A DNA stretch of 64,000 nucleotides from Octopus sinensis (GCF_006345805.1 NW_021832594.1:1-64000); one strand, 5' to 3'. Shown: positions 12,261 to 61,222, numbered from the stretch's first letter. A program made the numbers and translations. The notes: a model not told the origin generated them from the sequence alone.

Positions 12261-15200
12261 GAGGGCTTGTTTCAGTTTCCATCTACCAAATCCATTCACA
12301 AGGCTTTAGTCGGCCTGAAGCTGCAGTAGAAGACACTTGCTCAAGGTGCCATGCAGTATATATTTTATTAATATTTAGCAGAAGCAACAGAATGACTCAA
12401 GGTCTGAAAGTTTTTTGCATTGGCATTATCAAACTAGCTACAGGTTGAAGGTTTGTGTGCTTATATAGCTGCTGATAAATAAAATATAATATTTCCCTAT
12501 GGAATGTTCTAGAAGAAATTACAAAATGTCATGTGGATAATTCAAAAGTTTGTACAATTAGGTCATTCAATAAGCAAATAGATAAATAAGAAAGAAACAA
12601 AGTAAAAAGAAAAAAAATATAGTGGCATCATACATGCATACACACATATACACACACATACCAAAACAAATCCCACAAAATTTGCACATATACATGAGAA
12701 TGTGCACATGAATTAGGAGTATGGATTTGAGTATGGACACACATATACATGCACACGCATGTACACATACATCATCATCGTTTAACATCCGTTTTCCATG
12801 CTAGCAAGGGTTGGACAGTTCGACCGGGGTCTGGGAAGCCAGGAGGCTGCACCAGGCTCCAGTCTGATTTGGCAGTGTTTCTACAGCTGGATGCCCTTCC
12901 TAACGCCAACCACTCCGTGAGTGTAGTGGTGCTTTTTACATGCCACCAGCACAGGTGCCAAGGGAGGCTGGGAACGGCCACGATTGGTTGGTGCTTTTTA
13001 CGTGCCACCTATATATGTCAATGTGTATGTGCTTATGTTTACCAGTCTAAACCCAATGCTGATGTTTCTGTTGCGTCTCTGTCTGTCACCTAACTTAGTG
13101 GCTTGAGAATTAGTCAAAATGAACGTCTAAAATCCTTGAGGGACATGACCCAGAATGGCCACAATCGAAAGACAGAAACCACTGCAAACAAGAACAAAAA
13201 TGAAAGATGAGACAAAAGTCGTTTTTTTTAAAATTACAGTCGTTGCCAGAGCAGCTAACTGGTTTCTGTGCTGATGGCATGTAAAAATGACCATTCGAGC
13301 GTGATCGTTACCAGTTCGCCTTACTGGAACTTGTGCTGGTGCCACGTGAAAAACATTCGAACGACGTCGTTGCCAGTGCCACTGGACTGGCTCCTATGCA
13401 GGTGGCACGTAAAAAGCACCATTTGAGCGTGGCCGTTACCAGTACTGCCTATCTGGCCCTCATGCCGGTGGCACGTAAAAGCACCCACTACACCCTCGGA
13501 GTGGTTGGCGTTAGGAAGGGCATCCAGCTGTAGAAGCTCTACCAGATTAGATTGGAGCCTGGTGCAGCCATCTGGTTCGCCAGTCCTCAGTCAAATCGTC
13601 CAAACTATGTTAGCATGGAAAGCGGATGTTAAACAATGATGATGATGACAGTTAAAGGACTTCAAAGAGATTCCTGTAAAGACTTACCATCATAACAAGT
13701 GTGGTAGAGCCACCAATTAAACTGGCCTGTTACATGTCGGTTTTTGTTGTATGTGATCAGGTACTGAAGCAACGGATTATCAATCACAGAACCAATTTGA
13801 ATTGGTAGCTACAAATAAAGATTAAAAAAGATAATTATAAAATGCCCAAGAGTCACTTGCTGTTTTACAAAACATTGCAATTCTTAACTCTAACAAATGA
13901 TCTCATGTTATACCACTTACATCTGATGAAAGTTTACCTGTAATTATTATTAGATTGCTTTAGATCAGCATTCTTTAAATAAACTCAGGACACAAATAAA
14001 CACTGTATTTCCCAGTGAATAAGACATGCTTTTTTAACAAAAGAAATCTCTGAAAGAGTGACCCCAGGTTCTATATGGGCCTCTCATAAGCTAATTTTGT
14101 TCTTGATGCACGCTTTTTCTGAATATTCATAACTGAGATTAGGGTGTGTCAAATATGCTACTACATCTTTTATGACATCAAAAATGGTATTGTATCAGGT
14201 TGGAATGTAAGTTTTATCCAATTTTCTAGATGAAATTTTAGATGACATTTATTAAAGTATTGTCTCTTGTTGTCAAGCACAGAATGAAACAACAAGTAAT
14301 TTATATTTTCTTCTTTCAGGCTAAAAGAATATTGTTCACTCTTCTCCATGTTCACCCCACATTGTTTGTCCCACCAAAGAACATAGACGTGCTTCAGTCT
14401 GAGTTTCATAAGGCATCAATGCGAGTGCAGCAGTAAAATCCATTCAGAGCACTTATGGAGATGATGTAGTGAACCAAAGAAGTGGCAGGCGATGGTGTTC
14501 CTGTTTCTGAAGTGGAAATTTAGCTTATATAATAAGCCAAATGAGGACTGTCCAGAATATTTTGATTCCCAAGTGTTGGATGATGTTATCACAGCAAATT
14601 CTGCCCCTAGTGCTAGGGATCTCAAGAAATTTAAAGTAAGCCATACGACTATCCTACACAAACTGAAAAGAATTGGCTTATGATCCATCAGAAGTTATGA
14701 ATAGGGATCACATATCTTAGGACTTTGTTATCCAGCATAAAATAACCCCCACACATTATACATGTCTTACATTATTTATTGACTGTGTTATCTTTAAGAA
14801 ACATTTGTTAATTACCTAAATCAGTGATTCTCACATAAGGTTTATTTAATCAAAATGGGAAGGAAAATAAGGAAAAAAAGCTGCTCTTACTTGAATTTGA
14901 TCGATATACCGAAGAAGGTCTTCAAATGTCAGTATCCTGTGGAATGAAACTGTTTCAGGAAAGTGGTCCTGCCTCACAATATGAGAAGTTGGTACATAAT
15001 CATTTATTGAAGATTGAACCTGAGGAATTAATTTACTCAGTTTGGCTTTCTTTCGAACCTGAAAGACAAGACAATGATATTATTTCACTTTAAGAGAGGT
15101 TGGGGTCCACCAAGGTTCAGTCCTCAGCCTCCTCCTATTTATCATAGTCCTCCAAGCAATAATGGAGGAATTCAAGACAGGATCCCCTGGGAGCTCCTCT

Positions 15201-15861
15201 ATGCTGATGACCTTGCTCTAATTGCTGAGTCACTATCAGAACTTGAGGAGAAGTTTCAGTGAAAAGGACACAACTAAAGTTGTAACATTCCTCTTAAATT
15301 ATTTATGGCAGTGGATCTCAAGTGGGGTCCATATGAGATTTTGTTCATGAAAAAAAATCATGTGAATTAAATTGGTTATATTTCTATAATAACACAAAAT
15401 ATTTTAATATCTTTTATATAATTCCAAATAATATTTAATTATAAAAATATAAATTGTTTTTAAACATAGAGAAACATTATAAAAATATATAAACATATTT
15501 TAAACAATAGGCGCAGGAGTGATTGTGTGGTAAGTAGCTTGCTTACCAACCACATGGTTCCGGGTTCAGTCCCACTGCGTGGTGCCTTGGGCCGACCAAA
15601 GCCTTGTGAGTGGATTTGGTAGAGGGAAACTGAAAAGAAGCCCGTTGTATGTATGTATATACATATGTGTTTGTCCCCACCAACATCGCTTGACAACTGA
15701 TGCTGGTGTGTTTACATCCCTATAACTTAGCGGTTCAGCAAAAGAGCCCAATAGAATAATTACAAGGCTTACAAAGAATAAGTCCTGGAGTCGATTTGCT
15801 CGACTAAAGGCGGTCCTCCAGCATGGCCACAGTCAAATGACTGAAATAAGCAAAAGAGTAA

Positions 15862-15900
<39 letters not shown>

Positions 15901-18007
15901 TACATTCATACAAGTGTTGCATATGCACATATATATCATCATCATCGTTTAACGTCCGTTCTCCATGCTAGCATGGGTTGGACGGTTCGACCGGGGATCT
16001 GGGAAGCCAGAAGGCTGCACCAGGCTCCAGTCTTATCTGGCAATGTTTCTACAGCTAGATGCCCTTCCTAACGCCAACCACTCCGTGAGTGTAGTGGGTG
16101 CTTTTTATGTGCCACCTGCACAGGTGCCAGGCGAGGCTAGCAACGGCCACGGTCGGATTGGTGTATTTTACGTGCCACCGGCACGGAAGCCAGTCGAGAC
16201 AGCGCTGGCATCGGCCACGAGTCGGATAGTGCTTTTTACGTACCATCAGACCAGGGACCCTGGCTGGTTCAATTCGATTTCGATTCGATTTCGCTTGCCC
16301 CAACATGTCTTCGCAAGCAAAGAGGTTTGGCATGGGTGCCTGTCGTCGGATGAGGTTCTATATCGACTTCGCTTGCCTCAACAGGTCTTTGTGTCCAAGG
16401 GAGGAAAGGCATGCATAAGTGGGCTGGGCTCACTTGTCCTGCCTGGTCTTCTCATGTACAGCATATTTCCAAATATGCTATACACACAGGTTATATATAC
16501 AGGTTATATATACATATACACATATATGCTGGCATGGCGCCATGTAATGTGTATGAATGAAGATGGTTGCATGAAAAGGTGTTGGTCTCTAATTATAGAG
16601 GGAACATGTAAAAAGAGTAGACCCAGGAAGATGTGGGATAAAGTAGTGAGAAAGGATCTATGAACGTTGGGACTTACAGAAGGGATGACAGGGGAGTGAG
16701 ACTCTAGGTTTGTTGCACTTGAAAAGACACATCAAGCTAAGTAAAAACGTGGTTGCCCTTGCATGCAGCTTGTCGCCTGCATCCCTCTCTAGTTGAGCAT
16801 TCCAAACTTTGCAGTCTGGTAGGTGCTGGTGCCATGAAGAAAGTACCCATATCGGTACCACATAATGCACCCATGCTGGTGCTGCTTTGTTTGTTTGTTT
16901 GTTGAGCAAAGCGTTCTTCGTCCCAGAGCTCGCAAGATCGCCCCTCAGGATTGTCTGTAGTCGGAGAAGTAAGAAACGTGGTCCTTTGCTATTCATAAGA
17001 CCTGCAGAAGAGAAAGCAGGTCAACCCCCGACACCGAGAGAATCGACGGATAGATGAATGCGCATCCAGGCTCAGCGGCTGCGTAGGAAGTCGGGGACAA
17101 GAAACAGGAAGAAAGAATGAGAGAAAGTTGGAGCAAAAGAGTACAACAGGGGTCGCCACCACCCCTTGCCGGAGCCTCGTGGTGCTTTAGGTGTTTTCGC
17201 TCAATAAACACACACAACGCCCGGTCTGGGAATCGAAACCGCGATCCTCCGACCGCAAGTCCGCTGCCCTAACCACTGGGCCCTTGCGCCTCCACTGCTG
17301 GTGCTGCTTAAAAGCACCCAGTACACTCTGTAATGTTAGGAAGGGTATCCAGCCATAGAAAGCATGCCAAACAGAGGTTAAATGATGATGATAGCAGAAG
17401 GCAATAATACAGTGAGACAAGACATGTGGGTAGGAGATGCACAGGTCGGGGGCAAGCAGAGAGCAATGATACAGTGGCACCGAGCCAAGAAGATAAGATC
17501 AGGGAGTAGGAAGTAATCATAGTACATGAAACAGAAATGTGAGGAAGAGATGTAAGTTCGCACAAGTTACTTTCTTTTAAAAAGTATTTGTTTTAAATCG
17601 AAGATTTATGTATGTGCTGAATATTAGCTCACTCCCTCCATCAAATCGACATACTTGTACAGGTGCACAACATGCCACATGTCAGATGAGGAAATGCTTG
17701 CGGAGCAATGTGAAATGAAGTGTTTTGCTCAAGAATACAATGCCATACTCTTTTACTCTTTTACATGTTTCAGTCATTTGACTGTGGCCATGCTGGAGCA
17801 CCGCCTTTAGTCGCGCAAATCAACCCCGGGACTTATTCTCTTCTAAGCCCAGTACTTATTCTATTGGTCTCTTTTGCCGAACCGCTAAGTAACGGGGACG
17901 TAAACACACCAGCATCGGTTGTCAAGCAATACTAGGGGGACAAACACAGACACACAAACACATACATATATATACGACAGGCTTCTTTCAGTTTCCGTCT
18001 ACCAAAT

Positions 18008-18046
<39 letters not shown>

Positions 18047-18213
18047 AGAAAAAAACTTACAGGACTTTTAGCAGATTTGTATGCTAAATTCCTTAATTCC
18101 AATCCCCTTCGTAGCTGAACACCTTGGATTATCTTTTGCAATCTTTGGTTTGGTATTCTATAAAAACACTGAAAAGTAGAATAGAGAGCAACACCACCAA
18201 CAATAATAATAAT

Positions 18214-18248
<35 letters not shown>

Positions 18249-20987
18249 CAATAACAATGGTTTCAAATTTTGGCACAAGGGCATCAATTTTAGTGGGAGT
18301 GGGTAAGTTGATTACATCCACCCTAGTGCTAAGCTGGTGCTTATTTTATTAATGCTGAAAGGACGAAAGACAAAGTTGACTTTAGATGAATTTGAACTCG
18401 GAACTTAAAAGGTAGGCAATTGGTAAGCATTTTGTCCATTGCCTAATGTTTCAGTAAGCATGTCTATAGCATGCTTACTATTATTTGAAAAATTAACTAG
18501 CCTCATAGAAGATGAATTGCATAGCTTCCTGGAGAAGATAAAGGGATGCAGAAAGATGTCAAAGGGCACTAAATCAGCTGTATATCGATAGCATGATATT
18601 AAATTGATGTATGAATAAGAACACAGTTGTTGGTTGTATAACAAACTTGGGATGTGAAGAGACAGGAGAAATACCATTAAGCATCTCACCTGGCATGCAA
18701 GCAATTCTGTTAGTTACTTGCCTGATAATAAATGACAGTAATAATACGAGGGTAATCCCAAAAGTAAGGTCTCCAAAGTGCTGGCGACGCAGGGAAACTG
18801 TATGTGCAGCTATTGGCAACACTGTTGTGTTTGTTGTGCATGCGTTTGCCCCCTGTGTGCACCTCGCTGCCACACGCAGTCCTGGCTTGACAGTCTTATC
18901 TGATGGAGCTCCCCATCGACACTACTGCCAAGTGTGAAGTTCGTGCAGTTATTTGGTTTTTGAATGCAAAAGGCATTAAACTGATTGAAATTCATCACCA
19001 ATTTATGGAAGTGTATGGTGAGTTGTGCATGGTAGTCAAAAACGTCTGCAAGTGGTGTAGGGAGTTTGCAGCTGGTTGTACTGAAATTCAGGACAAAGTA
19101 AGAAGTGGGCGACCATCAATTTCTGATGAAACAGTTGCAAAGGTTGAGTAAATCCTGCGTGAAAATCAGCGGATCACTCTGGATGATCTCCCCATTTTGG
19201 TTCCTAAGGTTTTCCGAAGCACCATTCATAGGGTTTTGAGTGAAAATTTGCAATACCAGGTGTGCACAAGATGGGTCCCATGAATGCTCACAGAAGGCCA
19301 TAAATGGCAACCCACCTTATAGTCCGGACTTGGTACCCAGTGACTACCACCTGTTCCTTAAGTTGTAAGAACATTTAGCTGGAACACGCTTCAGCAATGA
19401 CAACGAGGTGAAAGATAAGGTTCAACACTTCCTTAAAGACATGGCGGTGAGCTAGTATGACGTGGGCATACAAAAACTGCCCCAGCGCCTACAAAGGGCG
19501 ATTATGTAGAAAAATAGATAAATGTTCAAACTTTAAAATGATGTAAACATCCTGGACAAACATTACTGTGATTTCTAAATATTTTTGGAGACCTTACTTT
19601 TGGGATTGCCCTTGTATTTATGTATATATTTCAGGCCATGCTGTTTGCAGCTTTGTGTAATAATACTCTCTTTATTACATAAGTAAGACTGATAGTAAAA
19701 AAAAAAAAGGAAAAAAAAAAAAATAATAATTACTTGATATTTTGGAAGTGACAGCCCTAATTTATCAGGCCGCAGCATCTTATATTTCGTCAGTAAACCA
19801 ATTAATGAAGGGACATTCCCCTGAAAAGATAAAACATCAAATGAGAAAAAGATATATAATTTACATTCATTAATATTGAGTCCAGTTTGGAATGAAGGCA
19901 GCAGAAATGAAAATAAGGATCTTAGAACTTATATAATGAAGATACTGATTACTGGGGTAGACAGTTTCAGTCTATGATGTGTGACAGAGTAAAGTGCCTT
20001 CATTGTAAACATAGAGCAGTAATGCTTACAGAGTATAAACTCTGACTCTTGAGCTGGTTGACAAGATATCATACTGACAACAGAACCATATTAACTCTTG
20101 CAAACCATATTAACTGTAAAGCATTCAAAGGAGTTGAATCAAGCATGGAGAAGTCAACATTAAAATGATGATGATGATAGTCAGATAGGCAGATGGATAT
20201 AGATATGCTTAGTAAATACAAAATTGGAACTGTTTATGATGCTAATCTCATATATGCTGTGTCAGTGTAGCAGTTTATTAGTACGCTCACCCACTCTAAC
20301 ACCATTTATGTAAATTAGGTCAGGTCTGGTTCAGTCAGTGGTGCACACTTTTGTGTCTCAGTAAACAAGTAATCAAATCCTGACGATGGCTTTAACAAAA
20401 GCTGAAACTAATCGATTAATTAACTTGATCCTTCTCACTGGCTGTCAAAAGGCCTATGATTTAACCAAGAGACCAATTGTCTTGGTAATAATTTTGTTAT
20501 TCTAGCACACGCACAAATATAGAATTGCACAAATAGTCTGTATGTTTGATTTTTGAACACTTCAGTTTTTCTGAAATTCAAAGAAGATGAATATCAAGTC
20601 AAAGAGACAAATCTCAGGAATGACATACACACAAACATCACTAATCCAAACACTGAACTACTAAGAACCTTAATCAAATGAACCAAACCTTATGGAATGC
20701 CTGTTCACATTTAACTGTACAAGCAGGTCAGTGTTTTGCCATGCTAGTACTGGTTAAACATATATATGACTGAGGCATTGTTTTACAGTTGGATGCCCTT
20801 CCTGTCACTAACCCTTAGGTGATTTGCAAGTAAAGCATCGCTTATATCAAATGACTTTGAAAGAACAAAGTAACAAGCAATTTGTTTACAGAAGTGACAA
20901 CACAGTTTGAACAATCACAGATACATACTTACAAATGTGTGTGAGTGCGAGAGAGGGAAGAGGAGAGTGAAAGTTCATGGATAAAAT

Positions 20988-21021
<34 letters not shown>

Positions 21022-21022
21022 A

Positions 21023-21089
<67 letters not shown>

Positions 21090-24000: not shown

Positions 24001-25295
24001 TTCAGTCTTCTGTAATAGAGCCAAATGGATTTATTTTAACATGATGTACAATGATAAAACGTTTTTATACACTCACCGTGAATGATGTATTGGCCTTTTC
24101 TGAAATAGCGAGATGATTTATACATGATAGAAGTCTGATGGCAGCTATTTGTGGGAAAGTGGTTTGTGGGATACAACATCGAATGAGATCACGACTGATC
24201 TGAATTCCTTATAAGGAAAATAAAAAAAAAATTAAAGAAAATTAAAATGAAACAAGAACAAACAATATGTGTGTGTGCGTATAAATTATATTAGAGCTAA
24301 ATTCGACAGTTTGCATATAAGGAAACGAAAACACAATATCCTAAAAAAACAAAATATCAACTAGATTTTTTTATATATTTCTTTATTGCCCACAAGGGGC
24401 TAAACATAGAGGGGACAAACAAGGACAGACCAAGGGAGTAAGTCGATTATATCGACCCCAGTGCGTAACTGGTACTTATTTAATCGACCCCGAAAGGATG
24501 AAAGGCAAAGTCGACCTCGGCAGAATTTGAACTCAGAACGTAATGGTAGACGAAATACTGCTAAGCATTTCGCCCGGCGTGCTAACGATTCTGCCAACTC
24601 ATAGTTTACTCAAAGTAGACACCTTCAGCTTCCATTCTGATCCTAAGATGGCTCCAGAGAGAGGTACATGTGTTCCTCACTATGCCCTAGAACACATCGT
24701 TGATCTTAGTCACCAGCTTGGCCTTGTTGTTGCAGCTAGAACAGTTGGTAACCTGTTGTATTATAACTGAGGGAATTAGGTGACCAGAATTTGGGGCTGG
24801 TGAAGTTGTAGAAATCCTCCAACAATTGCATCTGACCCCACACATATGGCTTCCAACAGCAAACCTCTCCAGCCAGGGTTTGACTGGTCTTCAGCATCTT
24901 CATATGACCATTTGAATTGTGCCGAAGGCCCTATTCAAAGATGGGTGGCATGACGTCACCTTCAATGGAGACGTAGCCAAAGAACCACCACAGTTTGGAG
25001 GAATCTTGGTTTTCATAACGTCTATGTCACATTTTGTAGCCTTTACAATGTTCACAGAGAATTGAGTGGCAGTCATGAAGTCAATATTCTGACACCCAGC
25101 ATAATTCATGATAATACAGGTAACTCAAGTCCAATATTCAGATGGCTTTTAGTCCTCTATGCCAACTAACTTTTTCTCCACTACAACTTTAATCCTTATG
25201 CTCTCCAATGCTGTTGACTGTTCAATACATCAAGCAGTTCCTAAAGAAAAGAGACAAAAAAAAAAAAATCAAATTTAGCCAGAGCACCTTGTATG

Positions 25296-25330
<35 letters not shown>

Positions 25331-28300: not shown

Positions 28301-28497
28301 ACATCGATAGCACAATACGATTTTTGCTTGGAGGAGTGGCTGTGTGATAAGTAGCTTGCTTACCAACCACATGGTTCCGGATTCAGTCCCACTGCGTGGC
28401 ACTGTGGGCAAGTGTCTTCTACTATATAGCCTCGGGCCGACCAAAGCCTTGAGAATGGATTTGGTAGACGGAAACTGAAAGAAGCCCGTCGTGTGTA

Positions 28498-28548
<51 letters not shown>

Positions 28549-32394: not shown

Positions 32395-32730
32395 TGTAGG
32401 TGGTACTGGACGTGACAGGCACGGAGGGCATACTTTCAGACTAGTTGCCGTCTATGCCCCGACAAGAGCAGGACGACCAGATTTCTTTCGGCGTCCGGAA
32501 ACCTTTCTTGGAACATCTGGCTTTTTAGTGCTAGCAGGAGGTTGGAACGGGATCTGTGACTGTGTAGGCTTATCAGACAGGAGAGGAGGGTGAAAAAGCT
32601 TTGCAAACCTGCTCAAACGATTTCAACAGTTTCACAGGTATCGACTGGATTTCTCTGATATACCAGCGTGGACCTGGTCAAACCACATCGGGTCATCCAG
32701 ATCATATATCTAGATATGATCTGCAGAGCG
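32395..32730 (+). mobile_element. Tx1/L1-group LINE APE-endonuclease fragment at the palindrome axis
   Basis: Frameshifted translation VVLDVT..RLVAVYAP...DFFRR...LVLAGGWNGI...WTW.N..GSSRSY matches APE endonuclease motifs (VYAP, GDFN-like, TW, SRxD). Confidence 0.7.
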
Positions 32731-51900: not shown

Positions 51901-54900
51901 TCTCCAGTTTTTGTAGTTATGATGGTGGAGGATATCGACTCCTTACTCTTTTTTCTAAAATGCACCATAAATGTTCAATAATATTTAGATCTGGGGGACT
52001 GTGGTGGCCAGATAAGATGTTTTTTTTTTACTTCACTAAAATGTTCCTTGTGCCATTCAGTAATAACTATAGCTGTATGAATTGGTGCATTATCATCCTG
52101 AAAGATTGCAACCATAGGATGAATTTGATCAGGTAAAATGCTTAAATAGTCTTGACTATTAATTCTGCCATGAAGGGAAACCATTAGGCTGGTGGATTTC
52201 CAAGTTATAGCCCCCCAGATCATCACAGATCTTCCTCCATGTTTCACAGATGGAAGAAGGCAGTCTGGGTTAAATGCTGTTTTTGGCTGTATCCACATGT
52301 ATACTCAGCCAGTGGTCGGAAATTAGGTAAAGGATGACTCGTCTGAGAAAATAACATCCTTCCACTGTTCTAAGGACCAATTCTATAGGTTTTTACTCCA
52401 CTCTAAACACTTTGCAGCATTTTTTTTTGAAAGTAGTGGTTTTCTGATTGCAACCCTCCTGTGAAATCCGGCTTTGTGCAGCTCCTGGCAAACAGTTTTT
52501 GTGGAAACTGGATTCTCGAGGTGGTCATTAAGGCATACGTAGAAACTCCATAAGATATACCTGGTGTAAGCTATGGACACATAAGAAGTGCAGCAAAGTC
52601 AAAGAAAGGTTAACTGGGAAGATTAGTTTTTGTGTGTGGCAGATGTACAGGTGCAATAAATGCCGAAGATGTACAGAAAACATTCCATCACATGCCAAGG
52701 GAGAAAAACTAGTAGTTAACCGCTTCTGTTATCTAAGTGACCAAGTCAGTAGCGGGAGTGGATGCTCTGAGAGCGTGGCTGCTAGAATAAGACTGGCCTG
52801 GGCAAAGTTCAGAGAGCTCCTACCTCTGCTGGTAACAAAGGGCCTCTTGCTCATAGTAAAAGGTTGACTGTATGATGCCTGCATGTGAAAAGCCATGCTA
52901 CTTGACGGTGGAACATGGGCGGCGACTGGTGAGGACATGCGTAGGCTTCTAAGACACAAATCTAGTATGCTCTGCTGGATGTGTAATGTCAGTGTGCATA
53001 CATGATAGTGTAAAGCACCCTGTGGGAGAAGTTGGACATAAGAAGCATCAGATGTGGTGTGCGGGAGAGACAACTGCACTAGTATGGTCATGTGATGTGT
53101 ATGGATGAGGACAGCTGTGTGAAGTGTCATACCCTAACAGTGAAGGGAACCTGTGGTAGAGGTAGACCCAGGAAGACATGGGATGAGGTGGTGAAGCATG
53201 GCCTTCAAACGTTGGGTCTCACAGGGGCAATGACAAGTGACTGAAATTTTTGGAGATCTGCTGTGCTTGAGAAGATCCGGCAAGCCAAATGAGATTGTAA
53301 TTGTGGTTGATGTCAAGGTCACGTAACTGGCCTGTTTAAAAGCACCCTTCAATCGTTGGTCAATATGCTGTGCTTGAGAAGAACTGTTGAGTCAAGTGAA
53401 ATCATTGTCATGGCTGACTGGCCTGTTCAACTGAGTGAATTTTAGTTATGGCTGATGCCAGTGCCACCTGAATGGTACCCATGCTGGTGGCACATAAAAA
53501 GCACCATTTGAGTGTGGCTGATGCCAGTGCAGCCTGACTAGCTTCTGTGCTTGTGGTATATAAAAATATAAAAGCACCCACTACACTCAGAGTGGTTGGC
53601 ATTAGGAAGGGCATCCAGCTGTAAAAAACCTTGCCAGATCAGATTGGGGCCCAGTGCAGCCTCCCGCTTGTCCAACCCATGCCTATGTGGAAAGCGAACT
53701 TTAAATGACGATGATGAACAGGTTTCTTTCAGTTTCCATCTACCAAATCCACTCATAGTACTTTGTTTGACCAAAGACTAGTGCCACATAGTTGGACTGA
53801 ACCTGGAATAACGTGGCTGGTAAGCAAACTTCTTAGCACAAAGCCATGCCTATCCATCCATCCATCCAACCAGTAGCCTGTCATCTGAAATGTAATTCCT
53901 TCATGACCATATATCTTATAGACATGCACTGCTTATGTCTTTCAAGTTTTCAAATAGTCAAAAGTGTGGAAGTAATTAACTATTTCTTGAAGCTGATATC
54001 AGAACCATAATTTCACAAAAGTTTCTCATATAAAATCTATGCTGCAAAGTTTTAAATTAGTTCAGATTTCTTTAAAATGAATGATTTTTCTTTAAAAGAA
54101 GCAGAGTGGATAACAAAACGGTTTGTATTAAACGCATTCTAGTCTACAGTTTATAACTGATTGCTTCTGCTCATATTTTGAAATTGTTTCTCTTCCTTCA
54201 GCTCCCAGAAATCTGTTACATTTTGAGTGAGCTGACTTTATATCCTGATGTTACATTATTCCGAATAAATGAGCTGATTTTGTTGTGGAAGAAAACGGTA
54301 AAGTGTTTCATTGACATCGTCATTTAATGCTATTTCCATACTCATTGTCTGTTCTGTAAATGCAAAAATATTGATTTGTGATGTGACTGGTGCCAAACAA
54401 ATTTTGTGACTAAGTGGAATTTCTAGAACGTTTTAAATTGCCAAGTTTCTCTTATCTATCCAACACAATCTTGAATATGTACTTTCTCTCTCTCATTTTA
54501 TCCATGAACTTTCACTCTCCTCTTCCCTCTCTCGCACTCACACACATTTGCAAGTATGTATCTGTGATTGTTCAAACTGTGTTGTCACTTCTGTAAACAA
54601 ATTGCTTGTTACTTTGTTCTTGCAAAGTCATTTGATATAAGCGATGCTTTACTTGCAAATCACCTAAGGGTTAGTGACAGGAAGGGCATCCAACTGTAAA
54701 ACAATGCCTTAGTCACATATATGTTTAAACAGTACTAGCATGGCAAAACACTGACCTGCTTGTACAGTTAAATGTGAACAGGCATTCCTTAAGGTTTGGT
54801 TCATTTGATTAAGGTTCTTAGTAGTTCAGTGTTTGGATTAGTGATGTTTGTGTGTATGTCATTCCTGAGATTTGTCTCTTTGACTTGATATTCATCTTCT

Positions 54901-57651
54901 TTGAATTTCAGAAAAACTGAAGTGTACAAAAATCAAACATACAGACTATTTGTGCATGTGCTAGAATAACAAAATTATTACCAAGTCAATTGGTCTCTTG
55001 GTTAAATCATAGGCCTTTTGACAGCCAGTGAGAAGGATCAAGTTAACTAATCAATTAGTTTCGGCTCTTGTTAAAGCCATCGTCAGGATTTGATTACTTG
55101 TTTACTGAGACACAAAAGTGTGCACCACTGACTGAACCAGACCTGACCTAATTTACATAAATGTTGCTAGAGTGGTTGAGCGTATTAATGAACTGCTACA
55201 CTGACACAGCATATATGAGATTAGCTTCATAAACAGTTCCAATTTTGTATTTAATAAGCATATCTATATTCCCGTATGCCCACGGGCATATGGCGTAGTG
55301 GTAAAGAGTGCAAGCTACTAACCTCAAGATTCCGAATTCGATTCCAAGCAGTGACCTGAACAATAATAATAATAATAACATTGAAAAATTCCTTAGGAAT
55401 GAGAACCCAGGTTCGAAATTTCCCCAAGATACCCGAAGAAGGCTGGAGGGTATATCAGCTGAAATGCTGTATTAACAACAAAGATGAAGACAAATATCCG
55501 TCAAATGTAAATAATGTACATAATTCCTCATCTCTTAAATATAAAACTGTAATATCTATATCCATCTGCCTATCTGGCTATCATCTTCATCATTTTAATG
55601 TTGACTTCTCCATGCTTGATTCAACTACTTTGAATGCTTTACAGTTAATATGGTTTACAAGAGCTGCTGGCTCTGTTGTCAGTATGATATCTGCCAACCA
55701 GCTGAAGAGTCAGAGTTTATACTCTGTAAGCATTACTGCTCTATGTTTACAATGAAGGCACTTTACTCTGTTACATATCATAGACTGGAACTGTCTACTC
55801 CAGTAATCAGCATCTACATTATATAAGTTCTAAGATCCTTATTTTCGTTTCTGCTGCCATCATTCCACACTGGACTCAATATTAATGAATGTAAGTTATA
55901 TATCTTTTTCTCATTTGATGTTTTATCTTTTCAGGGGAATGTCCCTTCATTAATTGGTTTACTAACGAAATATAAGATGCTGCAGCCTGATAAATTAGGG
56001 CTGTCACTTCCAAAATATCAAGTAATTTTCTTTTTGTTTTTTCCATTTTTTTAACTATCAGTTTTACTTACACAAAGCTGCAAACACATAATGCTGTGCT
56101 CCAGCATGGCCTGAAATATATATACATAAATATTATTACTGCCATTTATTATCATTTTAAAGGCAGGTAACTGACAGAATTGCTTGCAAACCAGGCAAGA
56201 TGCTTACTGTAAATCCTTGAGTATAATCCGCATTTTTTCCCCAAAATTTAAAGGTCAAAATCCTTAGAGCATACTATGTACAAGGTTAAAAATGAAAAAT
56301 ATATTCTAAGCAATGTCCGAGTCTCTATTTGCTGTTTGGCAATGTTTATTCAGACGCATTTTGTGATGTCGGGCGCGAAAATACCTTAAGCTAAGCCTGA
56401 AAGCAATGAAGTCATAAAAGAATCATCTATAACTTGCAGTAAGCAACATTTATTAAAATAAAAGTATTCAGAACACAGAATAACATGTAACAAAAACAAT
56501 TTGCAAACATATTTACATTCCCATATAACAGTTAAGAACATCACCATTATTGTATTATGCATGCGCGGAAGTGTTTGTTCGACTGGCTTAATTACGCACG
56601 ACTCAAGTTAGAGAAGGAGTGTGTATTATACACAAGGTTTAGGTTTTCCAGAGGTACAGCCCCCTAAAAATCTCCTGCGTATTATACTCAAGGGTGGACT
56701 ATACTCAAAGATTTACGGTAATGGTATTTCTCCTGTCTCTTCACATCCCAAGTTTGTTATACAACCAACAACTATGTTCTTTTTTATTCATATATCAATT
56801 TAATATCACGCTATCGATATACAGCTGATTTAGTGCCTTTTGACATCTTTCTGCATCTCTATCTTCTCCAGGAAGCTATGCAATTCATCTTCTATGAGGC
56901 TAGTTAATTTTTCAAATAATAGTAAGCATGGCAAAACATAGATCTATATTTACTAATCTACCCTCGCTTTTCTTTATCCGTCTGTACTTGCACTGTATGC
57001 CAGGTACATGCATCACAACCACACGTGCAAAAATGGTGACCTCCTATCAAGACAAAATGTGCATGACATTACAGGTGGGGACCGAGTTTGAATTTTCTTC
57101 GGATTGAGTAGCCCCTCATGCTCAAAAGGTCCCTGAATAAGTGCTGTTTAAGGCTAAGGAATAAAACACCTTTGTTTCCACGGGTGAATTATTCAAGCAC
57201 CCCCCCCCCCCCCAAACCCTCTCAATACATGGCTATGATGCTCCCTCACTATTCTTGCTTTGATCAGAGATGCACATATCGTCAGCCACTAAGGGACATG
57301 CTCAACTGGTTGTGGTGAAACAGATGACAAGCAAATCTGTGGTATTACCGAACATGACATTTGCTGTGGTCCATTTTTTGTACCAAGGCAAAACCTGTTT
57401 ATGTTAACACTCCCAATCAGTTAACATCAGAAGCCATGAGAACTGCTGCCTCTTATTGCATCGGGGCATTTATTATTATTATTAGTAGTAGTAATTCCTC
57501 TTGCTCTTTAATTTTTGAGTTCAAATTCCTCTAAAGTCAGCTTTGTCTTTTGTCCTTTCAGCATAAATAAAATAAGCACCAGCTTAGATGTAATCAACTA
57601 ATCCTCCCCCATTGAAAATTGCTGCCCTTGTGCCAAAATTTGAAACCATTG

Positions 57652-57686
<35 letters not shown>

Positions 57687-60600
57687 GTTGGTGCTCTCTA
57701 TTCTACTTTTCAGCGCTTTTATAGATCACCAAATTCAAAAATGCAAAAGATTATCCAAGCTGTTCAGCTACGAAGGGGACTGGAATTAAAAGCTTTAGCA
57801 CAGAAATCTGTTAATAGTCCAGTAAGGTTTTTTTCTTTTCTTTTTTTTTTCAATGTTTTTATCTGTCTTTGATTTTAAAAAAATACTGTCGAGATTAAGT
57901 TACATATGCTAACATGCTAACTTAAAGATAGCATTTTGGCAGTGACATATATAAGTAAATCAATTATCCAGAGTATATTTTTTGTGTGAAGTAAGTAAAA
58001 TATATTAAACACAGTTGGAGAATGGCAGGAGCAGGGTTAAGAATTACTGATGTGGAGATTCCTGCAGTGATTAATCAACGGTCACCCTCATTCAGTACAC
58101 TTTTGATCAAAGGCTTCCAACCACAATCATCTGTTCTCTTATATAGCGGAGACCACGACTGAGGCTGTTCCCATGTGTGGTTAGACACTGATGAGCCTTC
58201 ATAGAAATTGTAAATACAAATTGAGATATTACAATAAGCTAAAAGTAGCTACTTGAACCATTTTGATTGACTTCGCGCACACACCACTTTTATTTTTTTC
58301 AGTATGCTTGTTTGAAGCGATCACTTCGGAAACAAATTTATGCAGATTGTAAACAAACACAAAATGGGGGATCAAAGTTTGGAAAATTTGTGAAGCAAAT
58401 ACTGGGTACTGTTGTGGATTTAGTTTTTATACAGGGAAACTAATGTTAGTCAGCACGGCTTAGGGTACGATGTGGTCTGGAAGTTATTGTTTGAAGCGAT
58501 CAATGTGGAAACAAATTTACGCAGATTGTAAACAAACACAAAATGGGGGATCAAAGTTCGGAAAATTTGTGAAGCAAAAATACTGAGTACTGCGGTGGGT
58601 TTAGTTTTTATACAGGGAAAATAATGTTAGTCGGCATGGTCTAGGGGACGATGTGGTCTGGAATTTATCACTTCCATACCATAACCAGGGCTGTATATTA
58701 TTTTTTGACTGGTCAAACTTACGGTGGATTCCAGTATTTCAGTTTATTCCACCTTTATGGTACACCTGTTGTGCATTAAATTCAATTGATGATCTAGTGA
58801 TGTGCACAATTCTTCTTTATCAAAATTTTGTTGCATCACCATTTGAATATTAGCTGATGATTCATTTTCTATGGTGATGTTTAAACAAAATTTTAATATT
58901 TTTACCTTTTGCTCAATTTACCTGGATTTACCTGTAATTAAAGTCACTTTGAGACAAAAGTTATGCAATAGAATTGATTAAGAACCCTTTCTTTAATTAT
59001 GTTCCAAATATCACATTAATATGTTGATAAGTAAAAAAGTTACAGTTATTTAATGAAACAAGCCTAAATTCATGATTATTTTAGAATTTAATTGAAATTC
59101 ATGAGGGGTGTATTTTGGTCAGAAATATTGTAACGAAAGGGTTAAATTATGATGATGTGCTTGAAAGGTGATGGTTGTTATTCTCCTTTCCAAAGTGAAG
59201 AAAACATTTGTTTATCTTTCATGATTTCATTTCCAAGATTCACAATGCCATATACCAGTGGTTCTCGACCATTTTTTTTATTTGTGGAACCCTTTGAGTT
59301 CTATTTTACTTGGGTGGACCTTCATTGCCAGTCAGTGTTTAAAAACATTTTTGTATTGTTTAAAACATGTATATATATTTTTATTATGTTTCTATTATAA
59401 CGGTGATTATCTGGTTTATAATGGTTTTGACTTGGAAGAGATAATAAATATATATTTTTCTTGAGTAGGAATCTATGGTGATAAACGTGTCACTTATAAC
59501 TTAATCATAAGCATTTATCACCATGCATAAGTCTTAACTGAGGCTGTATAACTGCTGTGGGGAATTATACACACCACAAGACGCTGAACATGCTTGCTTT
59601 TTGTTTTTCACCTCTATAACAACAGTTTCATACTTGCAGAAATAAATTTCATCGACAGGTTGAAGAAAATGAAGAAAAAGAAATTATTTACTAAATTAGT
59701 TTGTTTACAGTACATTTATAAGTCAAAAGAAAAATGTCATAGTGAATTACGACATAAAATTTATATTAACTAATTCTTCCATAACTAAGCTACAAGAGTT
59801 TTAAACAATTCAAAATAGCCTTGTTGAATTATATAAAAGACTTGGCATTGCAATGACCACTATCTCAAGTGAGTGAGTGCCGTGGAATTGAGTGACAACC
59901 AATGAACACTGATTAATTTCCCCAAAATCAGGGTTTTTAAAGCTGTTCCTACCTGAATACTAAGAACTGTATTTTGTGAAAGATTTCTCTTTGATGAAAG
60001 TTAGAATTCAAATATGGGCAGTAATTTTAACCAATAGGAAACTAATAATTATACCTATTCGGGCAACATGACCATTACATCATATTACCGCCGATAAGGG
60101 TTTATTAGGACTTGCATCGTTACACTGTATTTAAAAACATTTTATATGTTTATAATTAAATATTATTAGTATCCGAGTTGACAGTACCTTGGTAGATAAA
60201 GCAATTAAGAGTATGAAGACAGGTAAAGCCCCCGGCCCATCAGGAATCACTGCAGAGATGCTCAAAATATCTGGCAGTGTCGGCTATAGCCTAGTCAGCT
60301 GTATAGTTAACCAGGTGATACACGAAGGAGTCATACCCAATGACTGGTGTAGCAGCACTATAGTCAATTGCTACAAAGGTAAAGGTAACGCTTTCGATAC
60401 AAATAATTAGAGAGGTATCAAGATATTGGATCAAGTAATGAAGGTCATGGAGAGGGTTATAGCCCAACTAATTAGGGAGAGAGTCAGTTTACATGAGATG
60501 CAGTTTAGGTTCGTGCCAGGGAAAAGCACCCACTACACTCTCGGAGTGGTTGGCGTTAGGAAGGGCATCCAGCTGTAGAAACTCTTCCAGATCAGATTGG

Positions 60601-61222
60601 AGCCTGGTGCAGCTATCTGGTTTGCCAGTCCTCTGTCAAATCGTCCAACCCATGCCAGCATGGAAAATGGACGTTAAACGATGATGATGATGAATTGTAT
60701 AAAAGAAATTTTAATATTTTGTGTATTATAGAAATATAACCAATTTATTGCACATGATTTGTTTAATGAGCAAAATCTCATATGGGCCCCACTTGAGAGC
60801 CACTGCCGTAAACGTTTTATGAGGAATGTTACAAGTTTAGTAATGTGTCCTTTTCACTGAAACTTCTCAAGTTCTGATAGTGACTCAGCAATTAGAGCAA
60901 GGTCATCAGCATAGAGGAGCTCCCAGGGGATCCTGTCTTGAATTCCTCCATTATTGCTTGGAGGACTATGATAAATAGGAGGAGGCTGAGGACTGAACCT
61001 TGGTGGACCCCAACCTCTCTTAAAGTGAAATAATATCATTATCTTGTTTTTCAGGTTCGAAAGAAAGCCAAACTGAGTAAATTAATTCCTCAGGTTCAAT
61101 CTTCAGTAAATGATTATGTACCAACTTCTGATATTGTGAGGCCGGACCACTTTCCTGAAACTGTTTCATTCAACAGGATACTCACATTTGAAGACCTTCT
61201 TCAGTATATCGATCAAATTCAA
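33851..61222 (+). CDS. CENPI: CENP-I copy B (inverted paralog); 8 exons in window, continues past the right edge
   Basis: Exons 33851-33953, 42503-42634, 49719-49849, 51043-51150, 54202-54297, 55935-56021, 57714-57821, 61055-61222 (933 nt, 311 codons, no stop). Exon lengths and phases are identical to copy A. 63800-64000 aligns with the copy A intron just upstream of exon 9. Confidence 0.88.
34136..34316. mobile_element. hAT (Charlie-like) MITE
   Basis: CAGTG..TTTTCAA TIRs; 8-bp TSD GTGTAGAT. Confidence 0.9.
35091..35359. mobile_element. MITE with TIRs of about 57 bp
   Basis: CATTCCTTCGATGTAACTCGACAAAATCAAAACATTTCACTTCGGGTA.. is mirrored at 35304-35359; TSD not resolved. Confidence 0.65.
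41102..41320. mobile_element. hAT MITE, same family as 34136-34316, opposite orientation
   Basis: TIRs CAGTG/CATTG; 8-bp TSD CATTATAC. Confidence 0.9.
41930..42174 (-). mobile_element. Short non-autonomous Helitron in B intron 1 (paralogous to 27601-27896, small internal deletion)
   Basis: Reverse-complement match with shared flanks. Confidence 0.78.
42503..42634 (+). CDS. CENPI: CENP-I B exon 2: (E)SSFKKPRGKLKTCIVNVKVCARAVGLSHEDILGLVNVAASLRY
   Basis: AG/GT intact; 3 nt and 2 aa differences from A. Confidence 0.87.
43170..43710 (-). repeat. 30-bp minisatellite (about 18 units), paralog of 26325-26605
   Basis: Tandem CATGTGCACCTTGATGCAGCTGTCCTCATC units with shared flanks. Confidence 0.9.
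45028..48147 (-). mobile_element. R4/Dong-clade non-LTR retrotransposon (RT + RLE endonuclease), internally deleted and dead, arm B only
   Basis: ORF pieces: N-terminal KWSREDN; RT YMDDL* (in-frame stop); YLGV...HPKAD.ERLY..RK.GGRGL; ETEGFIIAAQDQ, CCHC knuckle, RHD, NRPDI. Flanked by (TAA)n on both sides. Confidence 0.88.
49719..49849 (+). CDS. CENPI: CENP-I B exon 3: (G)IRISCDLIQCCIPQTTFPQRAAIRLLSCINHHTISEKANTSFT
   Basis: AG/GT intact; 11 nt and 6 aa differences from A. Confidence 0.86.
50139..50365 (+). mobile_element. SINE family C; other copies at 23562-23788(-), 24375-24600(-), 62348-62483(+), 62484-62706(-)
   Basis: GGCGGCGAGCTGGCAGAA..GAGTTCAAATT..GGGGTCGAT..AATAAAGAAATA repeated. 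Confidence 0.8.
51043..51150 (+). CDS. CENPI: CENP-I B exon 4: KLVFHWIVLVMPYMDAYDKLHAVYNVFFYLLRNYDI
   Basis: Identical to A exon 4 (0/108 nt). Confidence 0.9.
51729..52600 (-). mobile_element. Tc1 (DD34E) transposon, 5'-truncated
   Basis: TA|CAGGGGTTGGACAAAATA TIR; KHGG.SVMIWG, FQDDNAPIH, WPPQSP motifs. Confidence 0.88.
52690..53330 (+). mobile_element. RTE LINE ORF2 3' part; arm A keeps only the distal piece (about 22390-22678, minus)
   Basis: FCYL.D...ARIRLAWAKFRELLPLL...GHV..MDEDSCVK...GRPRKTW. Confidence 0.85.
54202..54297 (+). CDS. CENPI: CENP-I B exon 5: LPEICYILSELTLYPDVTLFRINELILLWKKT
   Basis: Identical to A exon 5 (0/96 nt). Confidence 0.9.
55270..55551 (+). mobile_element. tRNA-headed SINE with 10-bp TSD, arm B only
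   Basis: A box TGGCGTAGTGG, decayed B box, TSD ATATCTATAT; empty site in arm A at about 20197-20206. Confidence 0.8.
55935..56021 (+). CDS. CENPI: CENP-I B exon 6: GNVPSLIGLLTKYKMLQPDKLGLSLPKYQ
   Basis: 2 nt and 1 aa difference from A. Confidence 0.88.
56207..56718. mobile_element. Tc1/pogo-type MITE, arm B only
   Basis: TIRs CTGTAAATCCTTGAGTATAATCC / GGACTATACTCAAAGATTTACGG, TA TSD; empty site GATGCTTA|ATGG in arm A near 18680. Confidence 0.85.
57714..57821 (+). CDS. CENPI: CENP-I B exon 7: RFYRSPNSKMQKIIQAVQLRRGLELKALAQKSVNSP
   Basis: AG/GT intact; 21 nt and 11 aa differences from A, with no indel or stop. Confidence 0.85.
58309..58668 (+). repeat. Tandem duplication of a unit of about 180 bp
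   Basis: TGTTTGAAGCGATCA...GATGTGGTCTGGAA occurs twice head-to-tail. Confidence 0.85.
60175..60522 (+). mobile_element. RTE LINE RT N-terminal fragment
   Basis: AIKSMKTGKAPGPSGI.AEMLK...IP.DW..S.I...YKGKG....N.RGI. Confidence 0.85.
61055..61222 (+). CDS. CENPI: CENP-I B exon 8: VRKKAKLSKLIPQVQSSVNDYVPTSDIVRPDHFPETVSFNRILTFEDLLQYIDQIQ
   Basis: AG/GT intact; 7 nt and 5 aa differences from A. Confidence 0.88.

What the first reader, a model, noticed from the sequence alone, without database searches (positions are those of the whole stretch)
14891..61222. Mosaic divergence between arms suggests patchy gene conversion (concerted evolution)
Seen (hand counts, nt differences per exon length): e1 18/103, e2 3/132, e3 11/131, e4 0/108, e5 0/96, e6 2/87, e7 21/108, e8 7/168. 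Introns follow the pattern by eye: promoter, intron-1 and exon-7 flanks are heavily diverged, while 22690-24350/49570-51250 and 27000-27900/41930-42760 are nearly identical and share SINE and Helitron insertions. One duplication event cannot easily give both 0% and about 19% in neighbouring exons. Inference: an old duplication with repeated arm-to-arm conversion, as known for Y-chromosome palindromes.
Basis: partly seen in the sequence, partly recalled or inferred. Interest (0 to 1): 0.8.

Follow-up and report, generated by a model that had tools for sequence, protein, structure and literature searches.

The report
Octopus CENP-I palindrome with patchy conversion
Two head-to-head copies of the kinetochore gene CENP-I in Octopus sinensis form an old inverted duplication whose arms keep overwriting each other in patches, a well-known process (gene conversion) seen here unusually clearly and apparently still going on.

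Summary
The window is Octopus sinensis scaffold VCDQ01001647.1, positions 1-64000. It holds two head-to-head CENP-I genes (Pfam PF07778, E 3e-24) whose start codons lie 2.2 kb apart at the centre of a roughly 100-kb palindrome. The same palindrome is in the independent O. vulgaris chromosome assembly and, partly, in O. bimaculoides.

In diverged segments, sites group by paralogue (571 sites) and A-B divergence is equal in both species. In the near-identical tract (arm A about 23.9-20.3 kb), by-paralogue sites drop to 0 and by-species sites number 22 (Fisher p 5e-27). There O. sinensis arm A is closer to O. vulgaris arm B than to its own orthologue, and it carries a B-specific SINE that O. vulgaris arm A lacks. 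A second O. sinensis scaffold shows tracts that differ in conversion state, including reciprocal swaps. Constraint, staged duplication and assembly artefact are rejected as causes of the mosaic.

The mechanism is known; the locus is new. Interest is moderate.

The parts
1..32302 (-). Palindrome arm A, carrying the a-type CENP-I gene (models XP_036355056.1 / XP_036355057.1). It runs from the centre outward and is cut by the scaffold start.
   Evidence: inverted colinear chain; tblastn finds e1-e13 on the minus strand; window = scaffold VCDQ01001647.1, positions 1-64000.
32303..32808 (.). Central spacer of about 0.5 kb between the arms. Together with the flanks out to the two ATGs (31622 and 33851) it forms a 2.2-kb divergent promoter region.
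32809..64000 (+). Palindrome arm B, carrying the b-type CENP-I gene (XP_036355055.1, 705 aa). It continues beyond the window to about 90 kb on the scaffold.
31520..31622 (-). Arm A exon 1 (starts at ATG). Partner is B 33851-33953; 18/103 differences.
33851..33953 (+). Arm B exon 1.
27142..27273 (-). Arm A exon 2. Partner is B 42503-42634; 3/132 differences.
24077..24207 (-). Arm A exon 3. Partner is B 49719-49849; 11/131 differences, 9 of them by-paralogue sites.
22780..22887 (-). Arm A exon 4. Partner is B 51043-51150; 0/108 differences, and identical in all four O. sinensis/O. vulgaris arms.
21274..21369 (-). Arm A exon 5. Partner is B 54202-54297; 0/96 differences.
19734..19820 (-). Arm A exon 6. 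Partner is B 55935-56021; 2/87 differences.
18061..18168 (-). Arm A exon 7. Partner is B 57714-57821; 21/108 differences, all 21 by-paralogue sites.
14891..15058 (-). Arm A exon 8. Partner is B 61055-61222; 7/168 differences. It is followed by a GTAAGA donor, so the gene continues outward.
3105..13808 (-). Arm A exons 9-13, with approximate tblastn limits 13808-13686, 10357-10274, 7078-6959, 4459-4355 and 3233-3105.
27910..32261 (.). Old island 1 (promoter, e1, inner intron 1), 19.0% mismatch against B 32853-41916. Sites group by paralogue and there has been no conversion since the species split.
   Evidence: typing: arm A 175 a / 26 b; arm B 8 a / 200 b.
24616..26852 (.). Old island 2 (intron 2), 18-24% mismatch against B 42933-49506.
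   Evidence: arm A 194 a / 16 b.
15952..18171 (.). Old island 3 (e7 and intron 7), 16.7% mismatch against B 57711-60674.
13826..14739 (.). Old island 4 (intron 8), 18.0% mismatch against B 61370-64000.
20300..23900 (.). O. sinensis-specific tract in which arm A carries B-type sequence (partner about B 50026-55180). It contains e4 and e5 and a 739-column identical run.
   Evidence: arm A typed 20 a / 197 b.
26853..27909 (.). Older homogenised tract containing e2 (partner B 41917-42932). A-B divergence is 1-5% in both species and by-paralogue sites are few (0-4 per 300 columns), so homogenisation was at or before the species split, or recurrent since.
15077..15278 (.). Short zero-difference patch (0/199) just upstream of e8, over a LINE reverse-transcriptase fragment. 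Partner is B 60836-61036.
1..3500 (.). Distal zone that is 100.0% identical to arm B (scaffold about 72.1-75.6 kb, outside the window). Assembly scaffolds break here, and the a/b switch occurs here.
23561..23783 (+). tRNA-derived SINE (family S3) shared with arm B (50143-50365) and O. vulgaris arm B (98.2%). O. vulgaris arm A lacks it and has a different roughly 225-bp repeat at that site.
24368..24604 (+). S3 SINE copy found only in arm A, sitting exactly at the junction between the 5% and 20% divergence classes.
34854..41887 (.). About 7 kb of repeat-rich sequence present only in arm B intron 1.

Best explanation
The window holds the inner 32 kb of each arm of a roughly 100-kb palindrome that duplicates the whole CENP-I (Mis6) kinetochore gene head-to-head. 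The duplication is old: it predates the O. bimaculoides split, and background A-B divergence is 15-27%.

Since then, homologous recombination between the two inverted arms has repeatedly copied stretches of about 0.1-3.5 kb from one arm into the other, in both directions. Most likely this is repair of a break in one arm using the other arm as template. This produced at least three age layers: about 20% never or anciently converted, about 5% converted well before the O. sinensis/O. vulgaris split, and at most 1% converted after it. The newest large tract overwrote arm A with B-type sequence in the O. sinensis lineage, including e4, e5 and a B-specific SINE.

Conversion state differs between the two O. 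sinensis scaffolds, so the process appears to be ongoing. Some patches are reciprocal swaps, which suggests occasional crossovers between arms.

Shown: the structure, the mosaic, the lineage-specific transfer and the difference between scaffolds. Inferred: (a) the molecular pathway; (b) that the diverged islands persist because their identity has fallen below what recombination needs and because arm-private insertions block tracts.
For: Structure and gene:
- Inverted colinear arms.
- Eight exon pairs with canonical splice sites and linked phases.
- CENP-I identity: Pfam PF07778 at 86 bits, E 3e-24; human CENP-I 7pb4_I at E 9e-21.

Mosaic: chi-square 650 on 44 df; identical run of 739 columns against at most 146 in permutations; HMM rates 0.9%, 5% and 19.6%.

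Independent assemblies:
- O. vulgaris chromosome OX597823.1 has the same pair, with complete genes on both arms.
- O. bimaculoides has inverted e10/e11 copies.

Four-sequence site patterns:
- 571 by-paralogue, 50 by-species and 14 cross sites overall.
- Tract A 23526-20469 has 0 by-paralogue and 22 by-species sites; Fisher p 5e-27.
- Old columns: dAB 15.9% (Os) and 15.5% (Ov), with orthologous divergence only 1.0-1.6%.

Wrong-orthologue signal: OsA 20400-20967 is 97.0% identical to OvB but 88.5% to OvA. OsA 22677-24340 matches OvB in one 1670-bp hit at 96.2%, but OvA only in pieces at 92.1%.

Insertion transfer: the S3 SINE is present in OsA, OsB and OvB (98.2%) and absent from the OvA syntenic interval, which holds a different repeat.

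Typing at 1114 O. vulgaris arm-diagnostic sites: in the tract, arm A is 20 a / 197 b. In the old islands it is 175/26, 194/16, 25/9 and 134/11.

Not constraint: orthologous divergence is higher, not lower, in recent tracts (3.9% and 2.4% vs 1.6% and 1.0%), and pS is mosaic.

Ongoing:
- The second scaffold is colinear at 99.45%, and its differences are clustered (0 to 32 per 2 kb).
- 56 of 62 scaffold-variable diagnostic sites carry exactly the a and b alleles.
- At the run of 17 by-species sites, 17/17 have second-scaffold arm A equal to the O. vulgaris type.

Deeper concerted evolution: in the e10 segment, ObA-ObB is 6.2%, less than the 7.8-10.4% to the other species.
Against: - No GC enrichment in converted tracts (GC 0.365 vs 0.38), so the usual GC-bias signature of conversion is not seen.
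- The converted exons e4 and e5 are invariant in all four sequences, and e6 is uninformative. Exon-level trees therefore cannot show grouping by species; the signal comes from introns.
- The O. sinensis assembly holds three versions of arm B e8-e13 (the chromosome plus two scaffolds, about 0.5-1% apart). The two scaffolds are therefore not cleanly two haplotypes, and a long-read consensus could have assigned some patches to the wrong arm. The fine-scale 'polymorphic' and 'reciprocal' patches are less secure than the cross-species result.
- Only two species have both arms fully assembled, so the direction of events rests on parsimony without a full outgroup.
Confidence: 0.9

Rival explanations
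1. There is no conversion. A single old duplication was followed by very uneven substitution rates, with low-divergence blocks being conserved non-coding or coding elements, or mutational cold spots.
For: e4 and e5 are invariant in all four arms, so some purifying selection certainly acts. The overall dN/dS of 0.62 shows constraint.
Against: - In the low-divergence tracts, orthologous divergence between species is higher than in the old islands (3.86% and 2.43% vs 1.56% and 1.0%).
- The same tract is 0.3% diverged in O. sinensis but 7.0% in O. vulgaris.
- OsA is closer to OvB than to OvA.
- A B-specific SINE sits in OsA.
- Synonymous divergence is mosaic.
Confidence: 0.02
2. The palindrome or its mosaic is an assembly artefact: a fold-back chimera, a join of two haplotigs, or a consensus that mixes reads from the two arms.
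For: - The window lies on an unplaced scaffold.
- Both scaffolds start at the same point inside a 100%-identical repeat.
- There are three versions of part of arm B in one assembly.
- The a/b switch at about 73-74.5 kb coincides with the identical zone.
Against: - The arms differ by 15-27% over kilobases and by many private insertions. That is far beyond haplotype divergence or read error.
- The same head-to-head structure, and the same old islands with equal divergence, are in the independent chromosome-level O. vulgaris assembly, and partly in O. bimaculoides.
- The a-type alleles seen in one O. sinensis arm cannot be produced by mixing in reads from the other arm, which is b-type there.
Confidence: 0.03
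3. The arms are a patchwork of separate duplication events of different ages, not one duplication plus conversion.
For: Three discrete divergence classes could look like three ages of duplication.
Against: - The segments are strictly colinear and interleaved inside one gene, with intact splice sites and phases.
- The youngest class is lineage-specific and differs between the two O. sinensis scaffolds.
- Independent re-duplication would not replace sequence in place.
Confidence: 0.02
4. Reciprocal crossing-over between the arms (repeated inversion of the centre), not one-way conversion, is the main exchange process. The distal a/b switch is a real inversion, heterozygous in the sequenced animal or fixed relative to O. 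vulgaris.
For: - Reciprocal swaps at A 4060-4147 / B 71475-71562 (9 sites) and at A about 21750-21500 / B 53810-54100.
- OsB is orthologous to OvB up to 73 kb and to OvA from 74.5 kb (97-99.9% vs 80-92%).
- The P0151 C-terminus is a-type.
- The chromosome copy joins b-type to b-type.
Against: - Reciprocal exchange only swaps sequence and cannot make the arms identical. The near-identity therefore needs non-reciprocal transfer.
- The inner old islands are not swapped between O. sinensis and O. vulgaris.
- The switch lies exactly where an assembler could take the wrong path.
Confidence: 0.35

Closest known systems
Human and primate Y-chromosome palindromes P1-P8, homogenised by arm-to-arm gene conversion (own knowledge: Skaletsky et al. 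2003; Rozen et al. 2003; see also PMC6790999, listed)
   Same: Large inverted repeats around a short spacer, with genes in the arms. Recombination between the arms makes paralogues within a species more alike than orthologues between species. Crossovers can invert the centre.
   Different: Y palindromes are about 99.97% identical along the whole arm, carry testis gene families and sit on a non-recombining chromosome. Here identity ranges from 73% to 100% in blocks, islands have escaped conversion since before a species split, the cargo is one essential kinetochore gene, and the spacer is only 0.5 kb. The chromosome type was not tested.
RHD/RHCE and similar inverted paralogue pairs with exon-scale conversion patches (own knowledge)
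   Same: Two full-length paralogues in opposite orientation exchange short tracts, giving hybrid genes and neighbouring exons of very different divergence. The tracts are polymorphic in populations.
   Different: RHD/RHCE are tail-to-tail with a gene between them, and they are young. The octopus pair is head-to-head, sharing a 2.2-kb promoter region, and it is much older.
Escape from concerted evolution: divergence islands in duplicated genes (own knowledge: Teshima and Innan models; Drosophila Hsp70Aa/Ab inverted pair)
   Same: A mosaic of homogenised and diverged segments. Once identity falls, conversion stops locally and divergence becomes self-reinforcing.
   Different: Here the islands include the promoter, e1 and e7 of a kinetochore gene. 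Whether selection or passive loss of homology maintains them is not known.
Duplicated centromere/kinetochore proteins, such as Drosophila Cid and Cenp-C paralogues (own knowledge; general reviews listed)
   Same: Retention of two copies of a centromere or kinetochore component across species, with faster protein evolution in one copy.
   Different: Those paralogues are dispersed and evolve independently. I found no report of CENP-I paralogues, or of any in cephalopods (no paper holds both 'Octopus' and 'CENP-I').

Membership tests
Palindrome homogenised by arm-to-arm gene conversion | Two colinear arms in inverted orientation around a short spacer | tested here: met
   the chain runs from the 0.5-kb spacer (32303-32808) outward to both window ends.
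Palindrome homogenised by arm-to-arm gene conversion | Paralogous arms within a species more alike than orthologous arms between species, in at least part of the arms | tested here: met
   the tract has 0 by-paralogue and 22 by-species sites. OsA-OsB is 99-100%, against OsA-OvA at 65-94%.
Palindrome homogenised by arm-to-arm gene conversion | Discrete tracts: divergence heterogeneity beyond chance, with sharp edges | tested here: met
   chi-square 650 on 44 df; identical run of 739 against at most 146 in permutations; HMM segmentation.
Palindrome homogenised by arm-to-arm gene conversion | Transfer of arm-specific insertions along with point differences | tested here: met
   the S3 SINE is in OsA, OsB and OvB but not at the OvA site.
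Palindrome homogenised by arm-to-arm gene conversion | GC-biased outcome of conversion | tested here: not met
   GC is 0.364-0.366 in recent tracts and 0.382-0.386 in old islands. This is a crude test, confounded by repeat content.
Y-type ampliconic palindrome (narrow sense) | Near-complete (>99.9%) identity along the entire arm | tested here: not met
   about 36% of aligned columns fall in the 17-25% divergence class.
CENP-I / Mis6 (Pfam PF07778) | Profile match above the curated threshold | tested here: met
   86.1 bits against a cutoff of 23, E 3e-24, profile positions 84-349 of 515.
CENP-I / Mis6 (Pfam PF07778) | Sequence similarity to structurally solved CENP-I | tested here: met
   human CENP-I chains 7pb4_I (E 9e-21) and 7pkn_I (E 3e-20).
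CENP-I / Mis6 (Pfam PF07778) | Kinetochore localisation and assembly with CENP-H/K/M | not testable with these tools
   Needs cell biology or biochemistry, separately for each paralogue.

The most novel reading that the evidence does not exclude
The two CENP-I genes are a conserved, functionally split pair in octopods, for example germline or meiotic versus somatic kinetochores. Selection protects the promoter/e1 and e7 islands from conversion while the HEAT-repeat core is kept identical. In addition, the palindrome centre flips by recurrent crossover, so that animals can be heterozygous for an inversion that creates chimeric a/b CENP-I genes, like the annotated 705-aa protein on this scaffold.
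Probability: 0.2. Interest if true: 0.7.

Novelty: new member of a known kind. Interest (0 to 1): 0.5.

Why it matters
Arm-to-arm conversion in palindromes is textbook for mammalian sex chromosomes. This locus shows the whole life cycle in one place and in a distant animal group: an ancient duplication, layers of conversion of different ages, islands that escaped, lineage-specific and apparently still-segregating tracts, transfer of a SINE, and possible inversion.

It also shows that octopuses have kept two intact copies of an essential inner-kinetochore protein since before the O. bimaculoides split. I found no report of this. The copies differ mainly at the N-terminus and in one linker exon.

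There are practical consequences too:
- The annotated O. sinensis CENP-I proteins are mosaics of the two paralogues.
- The O. bimaculoides and O. sinensis chromosome assemblies have gaps or breaks at this palindrome.
- Orthology calls for this gene across octopods will be wrong segment by segment unless conversion is taken into account.

Tried and rejected
- Plus-strand gene model for arm A: no coherent exons. Rejected when 15058-14891 on the minus strand proved to be a clean 168-nt exon.
- Pfam on single open segments: only a weak CENP-I hint (E 0.12).
- Permissive exon chaining: combinatorial explosion and a time-out. Replaced by the two-arm conservation filter.
- First word-indexed homology search: no hits. 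The exhaustive HMMER search was needed.
- Chain pairing of SINE A 28332-28773 with B 40114-40530: rejected as two independent copies of a multi-copy repeat. The true partner of A 27966-28332 is B 34853-34490.
- '131 of 155 scaffold-variable sites match the opposite arm': not diagnostic on its own, because a new mutation in a homogenised region gives the same pattern. Replaced by typing against O. vulgaris alleles (56 of 62).
- 'SINE absent from OvA', as first read: the length filter could have hidden it. Rechecked directly, and it holds.
- Empty-site / target-site-duplication analysis of the private SINE: inconclusive, because arm B has about 20 unrelated bases at the site.
- Rfam scan: nothing.
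- GC-bias test: no signal.
- Exon-level four-way comparison of e4-e6: uninformative.
- O. bimaculoides as an outgroup for the inner arms: impossible, because of assembly gaps.

Full report
**1. What is in the window**

A self-comparison shows a large inverted duplication whose segments range from 75% to 98% identity. A plus-strand model for arm A failed. The minus strand at 15058-14891 is a clean 168-nt exon, with a TTTCAG acceptor and a GTAAGA donor, and its partner is at 61055-61222 on the plus strand.

e1 lies much closer to the centre than the high-identity alignment suggests: A 31622-31520 and B 33851-33953. Both copies start at ATG and they differ at 18/103 positions.

So the two genes are head-to-head, with start codons 2.2 kb apart. 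The palindrome runs to a 0.5-kb spacer at 32303-32808. Arm B carries about 7 kb of extra repeats in intron 1.

**2. Identity of the gene and the organism**

The e2-e8 protein matches Pfam CENP-I/Mis6 (86 bits, E 3e-24) and human CENP-I structures (E 9e-21). An exhaustive HMMER search found one close relative: XP_036355444.1, 'centromere protein I-like' of Octopus sinensis.

The window is positions 1-64000 of O. sinensis scaffold VCDQ01001647.1. Arm B encodes the 705-aa model XP_036355055.1. Arm A encodes XP_036355056.1 / XP_036355057.1, continues through e9-e13, and is cut by the scaffold start.

**3. The mosaic is real and not chance**

Over 9990 aligned columns, mismatch runs as follows:

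| Region | Mismatch |
|---|---|
| Centre / e1 region | 12-22% |
| 27.9-26.8 kb | 0.5-5% |
| 26.8-24.7 kb | 11-26% |
| 23.9-21.8 kb | 0-1.5% |
| Out to 19.7 kb | 1-6% |
| Around e7 | 8-17% |
| Upstream of e8 | 0.5% |
| Intron 8 | 12-21% |

For non-exon columns, chi-square is 650 on 44 df. The longest identical run is 739 columns, against at most 146 in 2000 permutations. A three-state HMM settles on 0.9%, 5.0% and 19.6%.

Synonymous divergence follows the same pattern: pS is 0.22 in e1, 0.25 in e7 and 0.016 in e2+e4+e5+e6. dN/dS is about 0.6-0.7 throughout. So the exon differences reflect age, not selection on particular exons.

**4. The cross-species test**

The O. vulgaris chromosome assembly (OX597823.1) has the same head-to-head pair, with exons through about residue 700 on both arms. 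The palindrome is therefore about 100 kb and is not an artefact of the O. sinensis scaffold.

I aligned OsA, OsB, OvA and OvB and classified 9713 consistent columns. There are 571 by-paralogue sites, 50 by-species sites and 14 cross sites.
- In the old islands there are 20-79 by-paralogue sites per 300 columns and none by species. A-B divergence is the same in both species (15.9% vs 15.5%), while orthologues differ by only 1.0-1.6%. The duplication is therefore roughly ten times older than the species split.
- In the tract A 23526-20469 there are 0 by-paralogue and 22 by-species sites (Fisher p 5e-27). A-B divergence is 0.3-1% in O. sinensis but up to 7% in O. vulgaris. Long runs of sites have OsA=OsB=OvB and OvA different.

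Direct comparison agrees. OsA 20400-20967 is 97.0% identical to OvB but 88.5% to OvA. OsA 22677-24340 matches OvB in one 1670-bp hit at 96.2%. From 23863 inward, OsA reverts to OvA at 97.9%.

The S3 SINE at A 23561-23783 is in OsB and OvB (98.2%), but the OvA site holds a different repeat.

Typing at 1114 O. vulgaris arm-diagnostic sites gives arm A as 20 a / 197 b inside the tract. In the four old islands it is 175/26, 194/16, 25/9 and 134/11.

This is a post-speciation B-to-A overwrite of about 3.5 kb in O. sinensis. A run of 17 consecutive by-species sites at 23151-22841 is best explained by a separate short A-to-B event in O. vulgaris. At all 17 sites, arm A of the second O. sinensis scaffold still carries the O. 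vulgaris type.

**5. Ongoing exchange**

Scaffold VCDQ01001672.1 is colinear with the window's scaffold at 99.45%. Its 229 differences are clustered, from 0 to 32 per 2 kb. Of the 62 variable sites that fall on diagnostic columns, 56 carry exactly the a and b alleles. The two versions differ at tract edges, and version 2 keeps an a-type island. In two places the window's version has arm A b-type while arm B is a-type, which is a reciprocal swap.

Caveat: the assembly holds a third version of arm B e8-e13 on chromosome CM016867.1, 0.8-1.0% from both scaffolds. The scaffolds are therefore not clean haplotypes, and assignment of patches to arms could be wrong. The a-type alleles themselves must still exist in the animal, because nothing else in the assembly could supply them.

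**6. Depth and edges**

O. bimaculoides has inverted copies of e10 and e11 upstream of its annotated gene, with assembly gaps where the centre should be. In the e10 segment its two arms differ by 6.2%, less than either differs from the other species (7.8-10.4%). That is concerted evolution at a deeper level.

Outside the window, OsB switches from OvB-like to OvA-like between 73 and 74.5 kb. This is exactly where the arms are 100% identical (A 1-3500). The chromosome copy keeps the b-b join. This is either an inversion produced by an arm-to-arm crossover or a misjoin, and I cannot decide which.

**7. Rivals**

- Constraint or rate variation fails. Orthologous divergence is higher in the recent tracts, the same tract differs 20-fold between species, and a SINE was transferred.
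- Assembly artefact fails for the palindrome and the mosaic, because of O. vulgaris.
- Staged duplication fails because of in-place, lineage-specific replacement.
- A larger role for reciprocal crossover remains open.

**8. Comparison with what is known, and verdict**

The process is the one known from Y and X palindromes and from inverted paralogue pairs such as RHD/RHCE (my own knowledge). This locus is not a uniformly homogenised palindrome. No GC bias was seen. No paper in the library mentions Octopus together with CENP-I.

Verdict: observation confirmed and interpretation supported. This is a new and unusually informative member of a known kind, of moderate interest.

Noticed in passing
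Window 1-3500, with scaffold 72-75.6 kb (L002 about 48250-51750): The arms are 100.0% identical over 3.5 kb. Both O. sinensis scaffolds begin or end in this zone, and beyond it arm B becomes orthologous to O. vulgaris arm A (97-99.9%). This is either an inversion by arm-to-arm crossover or an assembly misjoin.
   Followed up: partly
Window 4060-4147 with L002 about 47625-47712 (scaffold 71475-71562); window 21500-21750 with 53810-54100: Reciprocal swaps of arm-diagnostic alleles. One O. sinensis version has A=b, B=a where the other has A=a, B=b or A=b, B=b. The first patch also accounts for the 'cross' site patterns in the four-sequence test.
   Followed up: partly
Window 24368-24604: An S3 tRNA-derived SINE found only in arm A sits exactly at the junction between the 5% and 20% divergence classes. 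It may have blocked extension of an older conversion tract. The empty site in arm B is not clean (about 20 unrelated bases).
   Followed up: partly
Protein P0151 (XP_036355055.1), encoded from window 33851 outward: The annotated 705-aa O. sinensis CENP-I is a chimera: b-type e1-e13 and an a-type C-terminal part (SLSVCHHQAFLGHVLL and LIRINRKRYFQ, as in O. vulgaris arm A protein P0163).
   Followed up: partly
Proteins P0160/P0163 vs P0151/P0154: Between O. sinensis and O. vulgaris, the a-type protein has about 8 amino-acid differences in the first roughly 450 residues, against about 4 for the b-type (counted by eye). The a copy seems to evolve faster, yet it keeps an open frame through all exons found.
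   Followed up: no
Window 26327-26603 and 43176-43706: A minisatellite of about 30-bp period in intron 2, expanded in arm B. It reads as an open frame of HMH/DED-like repeats on both strands. This is one of the most diverged stretches.
   Followed up: no
Window 29105-29722 vs 30881-30405: A local inverted repeat (83-94% identity) inside arm A intron 1. It has no counterpart in arm B and is not aligned to O. vulgaris arm A in my chain. Possibly a fold-back element.
   Followed up: no
Window 18747-19614 (ORF 18891-19148, plus strand): A mariner-like transposase remnant found only in arm A. An RTE/LINE-like reverse-transcriptase fragment at about 15078-15260 is shared by both arms, with 0 differences in 199 columns.
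   Followed up: no
L005 (O. bimaculoides CM046610.1) 203-10683: The chromosome-level O. bimaculoides assembly has six N gaps where the palindrome centre and e1-e7 should be. Its CENP-I model therefore starts at e8 with a spurious N-terminus.
   Followed up: partly
L007 (O. sinensis CM016867.1), gap at 30203-30302: The O. sinensis chromosome has a 100-N gap immediately upstream of e8 of the b-type gene. The two unplaced scaffolds probably belong in this gap.
   Followed up: partly
   Followed up: no
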